Positions 2,721-7,944 of a DNA stretch of 7,944 bases are shown one piece after another. The stretch is from Vitrella brassicaformis CCMP3155. Lineage: Eukaryota; Protista; Chromerida. The notes beneath the pieces were generated by a model. The model was not told where the DNA came from and searched no databases. It saw nothing but the letters and a program-made list of their open reading frames with translations. Each line of letters opens with the position of its first letter. Positions within the stretch are counted from its first letter, which is position 1. Location of the stretch: the NCBI GenBank assembly GCA_001179505.1, contig CDMY01000960.1, positions 1-7,944 on the forward strand. The letters run 5' to 3'. The position numbers and the translations under genes are program-made.

Positions 2721-4703
2721 CTAGTTGCTGCGGGACCGACTGTAGCCGTTGCACTTGCGGTGTGCCACGGTGGTGCAATCTTTCTGGTTGCGGCTGAAGT
2801 CTATCTGGATGGTCGTGTGCAAGATCTTGAAATGATCCTAGCAAGACACGCACACACAAGCAAGTGCTGGGTGGTCCCTACCGACGTGCTCTGGTCTCTC
2901 TGCTCACGCACCTGGCATATCCTGGTGGCCGTTTTGGTAATGCGTATGCGTCTCGCCATGTCCTCCTGCTCGGCCACAATGTGCACCGAGAGGACGGGCT
3001 TGCCCACCGACAGCGACCACACGTGGAGATCGTGCAACTCGACCACGCCTAAGAAATCAGCACACACAGACCGTTGCATGCAGCACACGGGCAAGAAGGA
3101 CGCTGGCTCGCTGCGAGGTGGGTTTCTGACCAGGAATGAGTGTGAGGTCATCTTGGAGGTGTTCGAGATCGACGTTCCGAGGGGTGCCCTCCATCAGGAT
3201 GCTCACGGCGTCGCGCAGGATGCTGACGGTGCTCCACAGCACGAAGAAGGAGAAGATGAATGTGCAGATGGGGTCAGCAATCAGCCAGTCGGGGTTGATC
3301 CAGATGCACGTCCCAGCTGTCACCACACCCACACTCTGACCGATCACACAGTCGCACAAACGCCACGCTTCGATGACATATTGTTTCGACTATCCATCCC
3401 CAGTGGCAGGCAGGCACCTGGAGGAGGTCCCCCAGCGCATGCAAGTACGCGGCCCGTAGGTTCATGCTGCCCTCCTCAGCCGGGACATCCGCCGACTGCT
3501 TTGCCTTGGTCCTGCTGCACTCATACGGCAGCGGCGCCGGGGGCTCCTCAGCATCATGTGCATGCACGTCTATCGCGTGGTGATGCTCGTGCTCGTGTTG
3601 GTGGTGATGGTGATGGTGGTGGTCATGGTGGGCGCAAGGGCCACATCCGAGCGTCTGTGCATGGTCCTGGGCATTGTGCTCATAGTGGGCATGGGTATTG
3701 TGGGCAGGCTGAGAGTGGTGGGCGTCCTCATGGCCGTGGCAATGGCCGCAATCGCCGCCTAAGCCGTGATTGTGCACCTGCGACACACACAGGGAGACAG
3801 AGGGAGAGAGAGAGATGGGTCCAGAAATCAGTCACGCATACAAGCGCTCGTCTGTGGCCACCTTGAGTATTTGGGTCATCACGACGTTCGCACCCAGGCC
3901 GACGATAGCCACAATAGTCATGATTGCACCATCCTTTCCACCACATAAAAGACATCCATCGCATTCCTGGCGATCGTCTACTTGGGTCCTTACGCACCAC
4001 AGGTTCTGGAGCGATGACCTTCTGGACAGCCTCATACACCAGCCCTATTGTGAGTCCCCAGATGAGCATCACAGATGTCAATGCTCCTAGAATCTCCATC
4101 CGATGATATCCGAACTTCGTGCATACAGCGCACAGACAGATTGACAGGACACCACTCAATGCGCGTATGTATGGCATACGGGCAGTATTCATAGGTGAGG
4201 CACTCACCGAGAGTGTGCTGCCCCCGCTCTTCGAAGCGACCCAAATCGCAAAGAGCCTTCATAGATAAACCCACCCACCCGTTGTGCACGTCGGACTCTC
4301 TCTACGTCCCACCCCTGTGTACACGCCGACTCACCCGATTGCGTTCGCGATCAAGTCGGTCAGCCTTCATCAGAAAGCATACAAACCAGAGAGATGGCCT
4401 GCGGTCGTGGCATCGTCTCCCTTTCTCCCCGTCTCTTTCTCTGTCTGTGTGCACATCCACTCTGCATACATGTGCGTGGCGTCCGTCATGAGAGCTATGG
4501 AAGACGCGAGGTAACCCCCAACCACCTCCGCAACCATGAACACCACCTGCAGTCATAGATCATCAGATCATCAGATCAACACAAGCACAGGGACACGTAT
4601 ACCATGATGCATGCGTTGTCATGATGCATGTAGCCCCTACGCAGACGACGGACGCCCAGATGAGTTTCGTCTTGACAGTGGCCTGGTTGGCGTGGTAGGC
4701 AGC
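2721..4703 (-). CDS. ZnT: Cation diffusion facilitator (CDF/SLC30, ZnT2-like) zinc transporter, 5' end unresolved. Exons 5'->3': 4703-4641, 4546-4470, 4364-4335, 4256-4208, 4114-3998, 3933-3862, 3777-3418, 3335-3131, 3048-2912, 2837-2721 (1227 nt, 408 aa + stop)
   Basis: Splicing at GT..AG boundaries gives one continuous frame with CDF hallmarks in the expected order: KTKLIWASVVC|VVFMVAEVVGGYLASSIALMTDATHM|LTDLIANAIG|LFAIWVASKSGGSTLS|FGYHRMEILGALTSV (TM1-3, HxxxD in TM2); His-rich loop; SMNLRAAYLHALGDLLQ|SVGV (TM5 HxxxD); IADPICTFIFS; ILMEGTP; ELHDLHVWSLSVGKPVLSVHIV; HTTIQID; stop TAG at 2723-2721. All 9 introns (64-105 nt) have compatible phases. Family assignment is from recognised motifs, not a database search. 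Confidence 0.93.
3556..3777 (-). other. His-rich cytosolic loop (TM4-TM5) of the ZnT protein, containing two CxxC motifs
   Basis: 28 His in 74 residues (VHNHGLGGDCGHCHGH...GCGPCAHHDHHHHHHHQHEHEHHHAIDVHAH). The His7 run is encoded by CAC/CAT triplet repeats seen as (GTG/ATG)n on the plus strand near 3600-3625. Confidence 0.9.
4557..4578 (+). repeat. 8-bp tandem repeat (AGATCATC) x ~2.7 inside a ZnT intron
   Basis: AGATCATC AGATCATC AGATCA lies just upstream of the acceptor of minus-strand intron 4640-4547. Confidence 0.85.
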
Positions 4704-5062
4704 CTAGTGAGCTCGAAGAAAACGCGGCGTCAGCGAGACGCTGCCGCGAGGCGTGGATCCAGACCTGGGAGAGAACCAGAGAGCTCCGCTGTTGAAGGGA
4801 GAATGCCACTTGGGAGACTGAACTTCATTGCGGGCCATGATATGCATCTTCCGAAAACCAACACAGTAACGGATGGATGCCAGGCGCTCGTGCGCAAGCC
4901 ACAAGCGCCCTGCAGAGCTTTTTTCCGTTAGAGCAGCTTGACGTACAAGCTCTTGTGACCCCAAAGCCTGGCCTGCTGCACCCCACAGTATGGCTGCGGT
5001 ACAAGATCCCGCGTCGTTCATCTGTTGATGAATCTGTGTCGAATTGGCTAGTTCATCCACCC
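4704..5062. promoter_or_regulatory. Short divergent region between the ZnT and atpC-like genes (probable bidirectional promoter/5' UTRs, may include the first ZnT exon or exons)
   Basis: Head-to-head orientation with only 359 nt between the last recognisable ZnT codon (4703) and the atpC-like ATG (5063). No specific promoter motif was identified. Confidence 0.5.
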
Positions 5063-5188
5063 ATGATGAAGCTGCTCTGTCCTTCCCCTCTGCTATTCGC
5101 CCTCATCGCATCAGTGCCTTTCGCAGATCCCTTCTCGCCGCCGTGCAGCCCTTGCTCCCCTCCCTTTCATCGCCGGAGATCTGTGCAG
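5063..5188 (+). other. Putative bipartite plastid-targeting leader (signal peptide + transit peptide)
   Basis: MMKLLCPSPLLFALIASVPFADPF has a hydrophobic core followed by a Phe, then an S/P/R-rich, acid-free stretch SPPCSPCSPPFHRRRSVQ. This pattern is typical of nuclear-encoded proteins of red-algal-derived complex plastids. Judged by eye, no predictor run. Confidence 0.55.
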
Positions 5189-7713
5189 ATGAGTGTCATT
5201 GATCGGCAGGCGGCTTACGGAAGGAGCCTGCGTCCCAAGCGGCACCACGTGACCATCAAGGAGACCATCGATGACTACAAGAAGCTGGAGAAGGTCGCCA
5301 CTGCGGCGCACATGATATCAACAGCCAGGTGATGTGCACAATGGCTGCACCGGCATGCCCCCCACAATGCATGGGGTTTCTCTCGTGTACGCGTCGTGCA
5401 GGGTCCAGCGTGCTGCCGCGATATGGAATCGCTTCAAGACCTTCTATCAAGGCATCACTTGGGTGAGCGAGGATTTGAAACAGCCGATGCCACGAAGCTC
5501 GAGGTGTGCAATTGTATGTGTGTCAGATGACTCGAGCACTGCTGCCCCACGTGCTTCGGGTACAACAGTGGGAGGACGCGAGAGATATGACCCGGAAGGA
5601 ACGAGAGGAGGCAAGAGCACCGAGAGAGGTGGGTGGCCATGCGCTGAGCACTGTGCGTCTATAACGGATTGGCACCTCTTCGTCGTTTCAGGTTGGTCGT
5701 CTGTATCGCCTTCTGCGTGAACACCCGCAGAAGCGATCTGCCGTGCTCCTGCTCGTCGGAAGTGACTCTGGTAGACGTCCATGGCGTTCGATTCGCACCT
5801 ACATCGCCATCAACTGTCGCATCTGCAGGCAAGTGTGGTGGTTTGAACGAAGCAGTGCTGCTGCGCGCCAAGAAGCGAGTCATTCAGCTGGCGAAAGAGG
5901 TCAGGCGGGCAATAAAATAAACGAAAGCGTACATTCGTCTGAGTGTCCCTGTGTTGCATTTTGCAGGGTGTGGAAGTGCTTAGTTTCATCGTCGTGGGCC
6001 ACCGTCTGTTTGAGCAGCTGAAGGACGCAGACGCAGGCCGTCTCATAATCCAGCAGTACCCGAGTGGGCGGCAACCCGATGGAAGCCTTGCTAAGAACAT
6101 CACACGACAGATGGTCAACTGGTACACAGGTGAGACCAATGGATGTGCAGAGCTTGCCATGACACGGTACTGCTTTCTGTCTTGGCTTGCGCAGAGGATT
6201 CGCCCAGGATCGATGCGGCGGAGGCCATCTTTTGTCGGTTGAAAGCTGATGGCTACCGAGAGGTGGCTCTCACCCCCCTGCTGCCCGTGTCCATCCCGCT
6301 GTACGACTCAGACGCATTCAAACTTACGACAGATCACGGCAGGTCGGCAACAAACAAATGCCTACCGAACAACACACAAACAACAAACACTCGTTAGTAA
6401 AATGCTCTACTTGTGCCGTGTGGCGTGTATGCAGGGTGAAAGTGATGAACAGCCCTCTCGCGTCCACCGCGCCAGGGGTGTACGACATCTCCAAATACTC
6501 CTTCTACCTGCAGGACGAGGAGAGCGTCTTCCGCAACCTGGTCCCTACCTTCCTCTTCGCACAGCTGCTGAGGGCGATGGTGGACTCGTGCGGTGCTGAG
6601 GCAGCCGCAAGGATGTCGTCACACGACAAGCGAGCACGTGAGGAACAGACAGCGGTGCACGCCAGCAATGCCTCTTGTGTACCTGCCTGTGTTTTCCTGC
6701 CATCAGAGGCGATTCAGGGTATGATTGGCGATCTCGAGAAGGAGTACATCAAGGCCAAGCAGGCGTTCATCACGCGTCAGGTGGTCGAGCAGTCGAATGC
6801 AGCTATCAACGTGGAGGACAGGTGGCGACCGGGCGAGCCTCTGGAACACTCACTGCAGCGTCTCTACGTGCAAGAGCTTCAGCGGACATCCTCCCCCTCC
6901 CCCATTCCATCCCCACTCAACGCGACCCTCTCCACCGCTCTATCCGACACGCAGGCGACTGAGTTCACGTCGGCTATACGCGATCTCGGCAGCGGAGAGA
7001 AGCTCTGGCAGACGATCTTCGACGAAAGTGAAGACAGGGGCAGCGACAGGGAAGAGCGCACTCCTGACTGGGTATCGTCTCTTGGTGGCTTCTCGTCGGA
7101 CGAGTTCAACGAAGATGAGCGCGCTGACGAGGCGGCTTCGTTTGCACCAGACGAGGAGTTGACCGACTCATCATTACTGACGAGACTAGAGATTATGGGG
7201 GGTGACAATGAGGACTTGTTTCCGGCTCTGAGGCACCCACGGCAAGACGAAAGGCTAGAGTCTCTGCTTAAACGAGAAGTTAATGAGTCGTCGGCTGAGA
7301 GGGTGGATGAAGTGGCGAGGGGGGATGACAGCAATGAAGGCGACCTCGACCTATGGATGTTGAATCCGTCAAGGCAAGAAGCAGAGGAGGCTCTGACAAC
7401 GAAGACAGGGGAGGCCCCATCAGGGGAAGGGGAGGGAAAGAGAGTCATGGTCGATCACATGGGCGTTGTCTTGCCGTCGCCACCAAAGGGACGTCTGGCG
7501 GCGACGAAGAGGCAAAGAAGGTCTCCAACGGCGCGCCAGTCGCATCGAAATGTGACGTCTGCGGTTGCGAGTGTAGACAGGCGGAGCAAGAAAAAGGCTG
7601 AAGGACAGGCAGACGTGCTGGACCTCAGGTTAGGGAGCAAGGATCAGAGGATTGGTCACGATTCGGATGGGAAGCACGTATCGAGGCAGCACAGGGAGCC
7701 ACAGACACATTAG
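5063..7713 (+). CDS. atpC: Plastid-type F1 ATP synthase gamma subunit-like protein (divergent) with N-terminal targeting leader and long C-terminal extension. Exons: 5063-5328, 5402-5462, 5527-5628, 5692-5770, 5829-5899, 5967-6129, 6195-6342, 6435-6637, 6707-7713 (2100 nt, 699 aa + stop)
   Basis: The spliced frame shows gamma landmarks in order: N-terminal helix (KKLEKVATAAHMISTARVQRA, cf. KKIT.AM..VAAAK.RRA); AVLLLVGSDSGKCGGLN (cf. V.TxDRGLCGGFN); SFIVVG; RIDAAEAIF..LTPLLP; the cyanobacterial/plastid-type segment DAFKLTTDHGRVKV (cf. E.FRLTT.EG); LVPTFLFAQLLRAMVDSCGAEAAARMSS; and EYIKAKQAFITRQVVE (cf. YN.ARQA.IT.EILE). All 8 introns (58-92 nt) are GT..CAG and phase-compatible. The exact start (5063/5066 vs 5189) is less certain. 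Confidence 0.85.
6805..7713 (+). other. 302-aa low-complexity C-terminal extension of the gamma-like protein
   Basis: The frame stays open for 302 codons beyond the point where gamma subunits normally end (..ITRQVVEQSNAA). It has a Ser/Pro patch, an acidic middle and a Lys/Arg-rich end, with stop TAG at 7711-7713. Confidence 0.7.
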
Positions 7714-7944
7714 ACGGCGCATGGAAGGGTGTTGAGCCGTTTTCGCATTTAAGCCAGGCTGCATATCATGCGCTTCAACTTAACGAATGAATCAAGTGAC
7801 AATGGGCTTAGCTATGAGGCGTGCCCCCAATGATTGAGTCGGTTATTTCTCGGCTGTTTCTCCTCCTTTTCGGATGAGGGAGCGTGTATCGGACTACACC
7901 CAACCCCCCCCAGTGACCCTCATCCCGCGAGACGGCGGCGGGCC

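What the first reader, a model, noticed from the sequence alone, without database searches (positions are those of the whole stretch)
6805..7713. ATP synthase gamma-like subunit carrying a 302-aa C-terminal extension
Seen: the frame continues 302 codons past the conserved C-terminal helix (AKQAFITRQVVEQSNAA), so the predicted protein is 699 aa, about twice a normal gamma. Established: in F1 the gamma C-terminal helix ends inside the alpha3beta3 ring near its top, and gamma subunits normally stop there. Inference: the tail must exit through the crown near the delta subunit, be cleaved, or mark this protein as a non-rotor paralogue such as an assembly factor, brake or stage-specific regulator. 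Any of these would be an unusual form of plastid ATP synthase biology.
Basis: partly seen in the sequence, partly recalled or inferred. Interest (0 to 1): 0.75.

Follow-up and report, generated by a model that had tools for sequence, protein, structure and literature searches.

The report
Plastid ATP synthase gamma with long tail
The alga Vitrella brassicaformis makes an mRNA for its chloroplast-type ATP synthase rotor subunit (gamma) that carries, in frame and unspliced, a 302-residue floppy tail found in no other known protein; this is an odd but probably tolerated appendage on a very conserved machine.

Summary
The window is a whole 7.9-kb contig of Vitrella brassicaformis CCMP3155. A nine-exon gene on the + strand (5063-7713) encodes 699 codons. 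The public model (657 aa, "ATP synthase subunit gamma") starts at an internal Met.

Assembled transcripts from three runs in two studies remove eight GT-AG introns. They run unbroken from 6707 to about 7828, so neither proposed donor (6781, 6822) is used, and the tail is in frame in the mRNA.

The core passes Pfam PF00231 and folds as gamma. It is closest to cyanobacterial and chloroplast gammas, including their hairpin insert, but it is the most divergent gamma in the set.

The tail (6805-7710) has no relative in any search. It has coding-like codon statistics, is first acidic and then basic, and is predicted mostly disordered. Chromera's orthologue has an unrelated tail of about 90 aa. A clade of unnamed marine algae has 39-64-aa tails.

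Most likely this is a real rotor gamma with a lineage-specific disordered tail that leaves F1 through the crown, as engineered yeast gamma-GFP fusions do. Cleavage, a regulatory role or paralogue status are not excluded. No protein-level data exist. The scan had not noted this on other DNA.

The parts
5063..5328 (+). Exon 1. ATG 5063 opens a hydrophobic signal-peptide-like stretch, then an S/P/R-rich transit-like stretch, then the start of the gamma N-terminal helix. The public model starts at an internal Met 42 codons downstream.
   Evidence: Transcript contigs start at 5050/5053 and one reaches back to 4962. Kyte-Doolittle means are about 2 or more over windows 4-11. The donor is GT.
5402..5462 (+). 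Exon 2
   Evidence: Joints 5325/5399 and 5461/5526 in spliced contigs; AG/GT borders.
5527..5628 (+). Exon 3, a 34-codon insert that lengthens the N-terminal helix. My first model missed it.
   Evidence: Joints in runs X1 and X7; present in P0001; AF2 helix 19-85.
5692..5770 (+). Exon 4
   Evidence: Joints; borders.
5829..5899 (+). Exon 5, with the conserved G.CGG..N motif
   Evidence: Joints; G128, C130, G131 and N134 are kept.
5967..6129 (+). Exon 6
   Evidence: Joints.
6195..6342 (+). Exon 7, with the cyanobacterial/chloroplast-type hairpin insert (DAFKLTTDHG...)
   Evidence: Aligned to the insert of 5zwl_G and 6fkf_g; AF2 strands 248-252 and 255-259.
6435..6637 (+). Exon 8, start of the C-terminal helix (E.AAR motif)
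   Evidence: This exon alone matches PF00231 at 5.9e-6; joints.
6707..7713 (+). Exon 9, coding part: the end of the gamma C-terminal helix, then the tail, then stop TAG 7711-7713
   Evidence: Continuous in contigs X7 record 9 (6707-7828) and X1 record 3 (6707-7825) with no differences or gaps.
6805..7710 (+). The 302-codon C-terminal tail (P0001 residues 356-657)
   Evidence: No Pfam, NCBIfam, PDB, word-search or phmmer relative. Coding-like codon-position GC. Mostly pLDDT below 50. No tandem repeats.
6841..6888 (+). Predicted short helix just after the normal gamma end (residues 368-383)
   Evidence: AF2, pLDDT about 77. Prediction only.
6955..7404 (+). Acidic part of the tail (net charge -26 over 150 residues)
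   Evidence: Charge count per 50 residues.
7237..7317 (+). Predicted helix, residues 500-526
   Evidence: AF2, pLDDT about 75-78. Prediction only.
7405..7710 (+). Basic end of the tail (net +9; KRQRR and RRSKKK runs)
   Evidence: Charge count; translation.
7714..7828 (+). 3' untranslated region
   Evidence: Spliced contigs end at 7825-7838.

Best explanation
This is Vitrella's nuclear gene for the gamma (rotor shaft) subunit of the plastid F1Fo ATP synthase (AtpC). The precursor has 699 residues: a signal-plus-transit presequence, a very divergent but complete gamma core, and a 302-residue tail encoded by the same last exon. Shown here: the tail is in frame in the mature mRNA, it looks coding, and it has no relatives. 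Inferred: the tail is translated and stays on the subunit as an intrinsically disordered polyampholyte, acidic for about 200 residues and basic for the last 100. Because the gamma C-terminus points into the dimple at the top of the alpha3beta3 crown, the chain would leave F1 through that central opening and turn with the rotor in the stroma. I take it to be a lineage-specific, fast-evolving appendage that the enzyme tolerates, rather than a folded domain with a conserved job.
For: Organism and gene: (P0001, Vitrella, contig length 7944). Gamma membership: PF00231 scores 113.9 bits against a cut-off of 39.9 over residues 23-350. AF2 gives pLDDT above 90 for most of 20-360, and Foldseek listed only gamma chains among its best 50 matches, TMt 0.68-0.89. 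Plastid type. mRNA: eight GT-AG joints and an unbroken last exon in runs X1, X2 and X7, while X8 is unspliced. Coding signal. Disorder: tail pLDDT is mostly below 50, with only two helices at about 75-78, and there are no hydrophobic segments. Other C-terminal tails occur on plastid gammas and are also seen in transcripts: Chromera Cvel_189 has about 90 aa, and the same tail is in an MMETSP transcript. Five unnamed marine eukaryote gammas have 39-64 aa. Feasibility: GFP fused to the C-terminus of yeast gamma gives functional enzyme (Prescott et al. 2003, as described and cited in PMC3155378).
Against: There are no protein-level data. The only Vitrella thylakoid MS tables found list no ATP synthase subunit. 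Contigs cannot show minor isoforms or early polyadenylation. The core is extraordinarily divergent: it keeps 15 of 29 columns that are at least 85% conserved (family median 27, Chromera 23). It changes the otherwise invariant Arg of the RQ..IT motif to Lys, and the Met of the N-terminal K.AM motif to Ala. Its end branch is 2.3-2.6 substitutions per site against a median of 0.5-0.8. Such divergence would also fit a paralogue under altered constraint. The tail is not conserved even with Chromera, so no function can be argued from conservation.
Confidence: 0.45

Rival explanations
1. The tail is made but removed. After import, a stromal protease trims the disordered extension, and the assembled enzyme carries a gamma of normal length. 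The tail is then a dispensable or transient pro-region, for example during import or assembly.
For: The tail is predicted disordered and exposed and is not conserved. Its length differs widely between Vitrella (302), Chromera (about 90) and the unnamed clade (39-64), as expected if the mature enzyme does not depend on it.
Against: No processing site or protein data are available. An open, coding-like frame of 302 codons is kept. Appendages at this position are tolerated in yeast, so removal is not required.
Confidence: 0.25
2. The protein is a divergent paralogue that is not the working rotor. It could be an assembly factor, a brake or a condition-specific variant, while a canonical AtpC exists elsewhere in the genome.
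For: It is the most divergent gamma of 80 compared, with changes at near-invariant positions. The long branch leaves its placement unsure. I could not map this protein to the identifier Vbra_19020 that PMC5643376 lists for atpC.
Against: None of the 26 top hits whose sources I looked up, including all 23 members of the plastid clade, is another Vitrella protein. The paper lists a single plastid atpC for Vitrella. A tree joining it to Chromera's AtpC is not rejected and has a higher likelihood (AU p 0.57). It has a plastid-type presequence and is expressed.
Confidence: 0.13
3. The tail is retained and functional. A rotor-tethered regulatory or stator-contacting element would compensate for the undetectable epsilon, delta, b and b' subunits, for example by blocking ATP hydrolysis in the dark when it binds the crown.
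For: Chromerids lack recognisable plastid atpD/E/F/G (PMC5643376). This gamma has no redox Cys pair in the insert (sequence, alignment). C-terminal tails recur on several complex-plastid gammas, and one clade has a conserved acidic motif. Two helices in the tail are predicted with moderate confidence.
Against: There is no similarity to epsilon, delta or any family. The conserved motif of the short-tail clade is not found in the Vitrella or Chromera tails (p 0.34 and 0.55 against shuffles). The Vitrella and Chromera tails are not conserved with each other.
Confidence: 0.12
4. The long ORF is not the main product. A minor splice or polyadenylation isoform missed by contigs gives a normal-length gamma, and the tail is mostly 3' UTR that happens to be open.
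For: Only assembled contigs could be laid, and these drop rare variants.
Against: All three spliced runs show the same unbroken exon. Chance openness is about 6e-6, and codon-position GC is coding-like and unlike the real UTR and introns, whose GC is 0.51-0.53.
Confidence: 0.05

Closest known systems
Chloroplast and cyanobacterial F1 gamma (AtpC; spinach 6fkf chain g, Thermosynechococcus 5zwl chain G)
   Same: Same fold: N- and C-terminal coiled-coil helices plus a Rossmann-like domain. Same photosynthetic-type hairpin insert. The G.CGG..N, E.AAR and Q..IT motifs are kept.
   Different: A 302-residue C-terminal tail; a 34-residue addition to the N-terminal helix; no Cys pair; 14 of 29 conserved columns changed; only about 25% identity.
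Chromera velia AtpC, Cvel_189 (P0025, 455 aa)
   Same: Probable orthologue (clade not rejected). Signal-plus-transit presequence. It also runs about 90 residues past the end of the Pfam profile, and this is seen in an MMETSP transcript too.
   Different: The tail is a third as long and has no detectable similarity. The core is much less divergent (23 of 29 columns kept).
Clade of five unnamed marine-eukaryote plastid gammas (P0005, P0019, P0033, P0040, P0050; MMETSP and Tara metatranscriptomes)
   Same: Plastid-type gammas with acidic C-terminal extensions.
   Different: The extensions are 39-64 residues and share a motif, D-[SN]-E-[ED]-[ST]-I-x(3)-[FL]-[ML]-x-E-[LI]. This motif is not detectable in Vitrella. 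The organisms are unknown.
Engineered yeast mitochondrial gamma-GFP fusions (Prescott et al. 2003, J Biol Chem 278:251; cited in PMC3155378)
   Same: A large polypeptide added to the gamma C-terminus is compatible with a working enzyme. This shows that the top of F1 can let a chain out.
   Different: These are artificial, mitochondrial, and carry a folded adduct on a short linker. The tail here is natural, plastid and disordered.
Mycobacterial alpha-subunit C-terminal extension that locks gamma against ATP hydrolysis (my own knowledge; the structures appear among the Foldseek hits)
   Same: An extension of a core F1 subunit used as a built-in brake. This is an analogy for the regulatory rival.
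   Different: It is on the stator subunit alpha, is short and conserved, and its binding has been shown. Nothing of the kind is shown here.

Membership tests
F-type ATP synthase gamma subunit (Pfam PF00231) | Whole-protein score above Pfam's gathering threshold, covering nearly the whole profile | tested here: met
   113.9 bits against 39.9; residues 23-350 match profile positions 5-277 of 285.
F-type ATP synthase gamma subunit (Pfam PF00231) | Gamma fold: long antiparallel N- and C-terminal helices plus an alpha/beta domain | tested here: met
   AF2 pLDDT is above 90 over most of 20-360, with helices 19-85 and 283-361. The best 50 listed Foldseek PDB matches are all gamma chains, TMt 0.68-0.89.
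F-type ATP synthase gamma subunit (Pfam PF00231) | Near-invariant residues of the family | tested here: inconclusive
   Only 15 of 29 columns that are at least 85% conserved are kept. G128, C130, G131, N134, G162, P236, E310, R314, Q341 and T345 are kept. M40A, M318H, A321R and R340K are changed.
F-type ATP synthase gamma subunit (Pfam PF00231) | Assembles as the rotor in alpha3beta3 and turns | not testable with these tools
   Needs purification or structure. No MS evidence was found.
NCBIfam TIGR01146 (bacterial F1 gamma equivalog) | Score above the curated equivalog cut-off | tested here: not met
   99.3 bits against 194.45 (E 3.3e-28). The model is tuned to bacterial orthologues, so I do not file the protein under this equivalog, only under the Pfam family.
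Plastid/cyanobacterial-type gamma (AtpC) | Closest to cyanobacterial and chloroplast gammas rather than mitochondrial ones | tested here: met
   5zwl_G 6.6e-18 and 6fkf_g 2.2e-13, against Toxoplasma, bovine and Polytomella mitochondrial gammas at about 2e-6 to 7e-6. Six of the seven best hits after the query itself (P0002-P0007) are plastid-clade members.
Plastid/cyanobacterial-type gamma (AtpC) | The insert with a beta-hairpin between the alpha/beta domain and the C-terminal helix | tested here: met
   DAFKLTTDHGRVKV aligns to EIFRLTTRGSHLEV (5zwl) and ELFRLTTKEGKLTV (6fkf). AF2 places strands at 248-252 and 255-259.
Plastid/cyanobacterial-type gamma (AtpC) | Placement inside the plastid/cyanobacterial clade on a tree | tested here: inconclusive
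   In the 80-row tree the long branch is pulled to another long branch, P0053. In the 40-row tree it falls on the plastid side with weak support (36). A clade with Chromera and P0004 is not rejected (AU p 0.57).
Plastid/cyanobacterial-type gamma (AtpC) | Bipartite presequence for a complex plastid | tested here: inconclusive
   A hydrophobic N-terminus is followed by an S/P/R-rich stretch when translation starts at ATG 5063. No dedicated predictor was available.
Green-lineage thiol-regulated chloroplast gamma | Cys pair in the insert (spinach ICDINGKC) | tested here: not met
   There is no Cys in the aligned insert of P0001 (alignment; sequence).

The most novel reading that the evidence does not exclude
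C-terminal tails on the rotor subunit may be a functional trait of chromerid and some other complex-plastid ATP synthases. In this reading the tail projects through the crown and acts as a tethered inhibitor or stator contact. It would replace the lost or unrecognisable epsilon/delta regulation, making this a rotary ATP synthase whose shaft passes right through the catalytic head.
Probability: 0.12. Interest if true: 0.8.

Novelty: new variant of a known kind. Interest (0 to 1): 0.45.

Why it matters
The gamma C-terminus is buried in the bearing at the top of F1 in every solved ATP synthase. Among 176 gammas compared here, a median of 8 residues follows the last helix motif. A natural gamma of twice the normal length shows what the top of F1 can tolerate. 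It also bears on an open question: chromerid plastid ATP synthases have no recognisable delta, epsilon, b or b' subunits (PMC5643376). The locus gives concrete targets for proteomics or cryo-EM of that enzyme, namely tail peptides and an expected mass of about 70 kDa against about 36 kDa. If the tail proves to be a passive disordered appendage, the finding is a curiosity of chromerid protein evolution plus a correction to a gene model.

Tried and rejected
1. My first exon model missed the 102-nt exon 5527-5628. Transcripts corrected it.

2. By eye, the acidic motif of the short-tail clade seemed to recur in Vitrella (PDEELTDSSLLTRLEIMGG). An HMM built from the five extensions scored the Vitrella and Chromera tails no better than shuffles (p 0.34 and 0.55), so I rejected the match.

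3. I looked for a hidden epsilon or delta domain in the tail. Pfam, NCBIfam and PDB sequence searches up to E = 1-10 gave nothing. The ESM Atlas gave noise only: score 0.80 to clusters of about 20 aa.

4. The tail is not a microsatellite expansion: there are no tandem repeats.

5. The word search with Chromera's gamma returned mostly bacterial gammas and missed even P0004 at 42% identity. It is therefore useless for counting Vitrella paralogues.

6. I tried to name the short-tail clade. The sources are only MMETSP and Tara ids. There is no dinoflagellate spliced leader on L001. The Atlas gives only 'algal gamma'.

7. The AU test on the 80-row tree did not finish in time, so I repeated it on 40 rows.

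8. I could not map P0001 (CEM37883.1 / A0A0G4H369) to Vbra_19020.

9. In one search, exon DNA was concatenated in memory only to count codons. Nothing joined was translated, saved or searched.
Full report
**What the window is.** A word search with the long ORF returned one protein, P0001 (657 aa). NCBI calls it 'unnamed protein product [Vitrella brassicaformis CCMP3155]' and UniRef calls it 'ATP synthase subunit gamma'. Its longest contig is 7944 nt, which is the length of the window (accessions). The window is therefore a small whole contig of this chromerid alga, a photosynthetic relative of apicomplexans.

**Gene structure.** Three-frame translation and splice-site reading gave a multi-exon gene on the + strand. 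Laying the contigs of four public runs settled the structure.
- Three runs (X1, X2, X7; two studies) hold spliced contigs, and one (X8) holds unspliced DNA-like contigs.
- X7 record 9 (2226 nt) runs from 5053 to 7828 with eight GT-AG introns removed: 5329-5401, 5463-5526, 5629-5691, 5771-5828, 5900-5966, 6130-6194, 6343-6434 and 6638-6706.
- All exon borders are AG/GT, and the exons from ATG 5063 sum to 2100 nt, that is 699 codons plus stop.
- The public model starts at an internal Met 42 codons downstream. It lacks the first 42 residues, which form a hydrophobic signal-peptide-like segment followed by an S/P/R-rich stretch. This is the pattern expected for import into a complex plastid. Chromera's orthologue begins in the same way.

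The last exon is continuous from 6707 to 7828 (X7) and to 7825 (X1), with no differing letters or gaps. X2 covers most of it. No joint is reported downstream of 6707, so the donors proposed at 6781 and 6822 are not used in these assemblies. The tail is thus in frame in the mature mRNA. One caveat applies: contigs show what is present, not what is absent, and raw reads were not available.

**Is the open frame meaningful?** The stretch 6805-7710 is 302 sense codons.
- Only 1 of 20,000 shuffles stays open, and composition gives P about 6e-6.
- GC at codon positions 1/2/3 is 0.62/0.47/0.64 in this frame, like the gamma exons (0.62/0.43/0.69). Introns and the 3' UTR have GC of 0.51-0.53.
- There are no tandem repeats.

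**Is it a gamma, and which kind?**
- Exon by exon, only exon 8 reaches Pfam (PF00231, 5.9e-6). The database protein as a whole scores 113.9 bits against a gathering score of 39.9, over residues 23-350, which match profile positions 5-277 of 285.
- It stays under the bacterial equivalog cut-off of TIGR01146 (99 bits against 194).
- An AlphaFold2 model built on 80 homologues gives pLDDT above 90 for most of 20-360, with the typical long N- and C-terminal helices. The best 50 Foldseek PDB matches listed are all gamma chains.
- Against PDB sequences the best matches are the cyanobacterial gamma 5zwl_G (6.6e-18) and spinach chloroplast gamma 6fkf_g (2.2e-13). Mitochondrial gammas, including Toxoplasma's, lie near 1e-6. 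The alignments include the hairpin insert of photosynthetic gammas. There is no Cys pair, so no green-type thiol switch.

**How divergent it is.**
- In 1.84 billion representative proteins, only the protein itself scores E <= 1e-30. The next hit is 8.3e-19 at 28% identity.
- It keeps 15 of 29 columns that are at least 85% conserved in the other 79 gammas. The family median is 27, the next lowest is 22, and Chromera keeps 23. The changes include R340K, in a column that is otherwise 100% Arg, and the Met of the N-terminal K.AM motif.
- Its end branch is 2.3-2.6 substitutions per site against a median of 0.5-0.8. In the 80-row tree it is attracted to another long branch. With that row removed it falls on the plastid/cyanobacterial side.
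- A tree that joins it to Chromera's AtpC and P0004 has a higher likelihood than the free tree and is not rejected (AU p 0.57).

**The tail itself.**
- No hit has a best stretch that reaches meaningfully past query residue 360.
- A word search restricted to residues 357-657 found only the protein itself among 6981 candidates.
- Pfam, NCBIfam and PDB sequence searches were blank at lax thresholds, and the ESM Atlas gave noise.
- The tail is rich in E, S, R, L and D. It is strongly acidic over residues 51-200 of the tail (net -26) and basic over the last 100 (net +9). It has no hydrophobic segment.
- AF2 gives pLDDT below 50 for most of it. Two helices have moderate confidence: 368-383, right after the normal end of gamma, and 500-526.

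**Other tails.**
- Among 176 gammas with a recognisable RQAxIT helix motif, a median of 8 residues follows it.
- Chromera velia Cvel_189, the atpC listed in PMC5643376, runs about 90 residues past the end of the Pfam profile. The same tail is in an MMETSP transcript. It has no similarity to Vitrella's tail.
- Five representatives from MMETSP and Tara Oceans metatranscriptomes form a well-supported clade (98-99 SH-aLRT). They carry 39-64-residue acidic extensions that share a motif. An HMM of that motif does not find the Vitrella or Chromera tails.
- C-terminal extensions therefore recur on complex-plastid gammas but look independent. Vitrella's is by far the longest.

**Context from papers.**
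- Sobotka et al. 2017 (PMC5643376) found no plastid atpD, atpE, atpF or atpG in Chromera or Vitrella and suspected highly divergent subunits. Their MS tables contain no Vitrella ATP synthase subunit.
- PMC3155378 describes and cites Prescott et al. [quoted passage not shown]
- I found no paper that describes a natural C-terminal extension of a plastid gamma.

**Reading.**
- Shown: a real, expressed, nine-exon gene; a plastid-type gamma core; and a tail that is in frame, unspliced, coding-like and without relatives.
- Inferred: the tail is translated and remains as a disordered appendage that exits through the crown opening and turns with the rotor. Its lack of conservation suggests tolerance rather than a conserved function (0.45).
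- Rivals: cleavage after import (0.25); a non-rotor paralogue (0.13), which the divergence keeps alive because I could not scan the whole Vitrella genome; a functional tethered regulator that replaces epsilon/delta functions (0.12); and a minor-isoform artefact (0.05).

**Limits and rule-keeping.**
- The joined 699-residue model was never built as a protein, searched or folded. Whole-protein work used the database protein P0001, and exons were searched by reference.
- In one search, exon DNA was concatenated in memory only to count codons.

Noticed in passing
window 5063-5191: The public protein model (657 aa) starts at an internal Met. Transcript contigs include an upstream in-frame ATG at 5063 that adds 42 residues with a signal-peptide-like hydrophobic core and an S/P/R-rich stretch. 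The deposited model probably lacks the plastid-targeting presequence. A 13-codon upstream ORF (ATG 4990) lies in one contig that reaches back to 4962.
   Followed up: partly
window 2800-4210, minus strand: The neighbouring gene for a cation diffusion facilitator (zinc transporter) is split by introns. It matches Pfam Cation_efflux (PF01545) and ZT_dimer (PF16916) and has a long His-rich loop (about 3450-3650).
   Followed up: partly
window 7850-7944: The contig end is a high-copy repeat. Depth in the DNA-like run X8 jumps from about 50-120 to 3,500-10,900. Several different contigs join at 7822-7842, with variant letters at 7888, 7903 and 7909. This probably explains why the assembly stops here.
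   Followed up: no
P0005, P0019 (L001:347-1300), P0033, P0040, P0050: A well-supported clade of plastid-type gammas comes from unnamed marine eukaryotes (MMETSP, Tara metatranscriptomes). Its members carry a 39-64-residue acidic C-terminal extension with a conserved motif (D-[SN]-E-[ED]-[ST]-I...[FL]-[ML]-x-E-[LI], then G-S-L-P-x-E-P). The organisms and the function are unknown.
   Followed up: partly
P0069 (639 aa): A green-lineage chloroplast gamma with the redox Cys motif continues into a multi-pass membrane protein of about 270 residues. It is either a natural fusion or a read-through gene model.
   Followed up: no
window 5527-5628: A 34-codon exon confirmed by transcripts lengthens the gamma N-terminal helix. 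AF2 predicts helix 19-85, against about 45-55 residues in ordinary gammas. It is a second unusual feature of this subunit.
   Followed up: partly
It is a second unusual item in the same pathway. I did not check it here.
   Followed up: no
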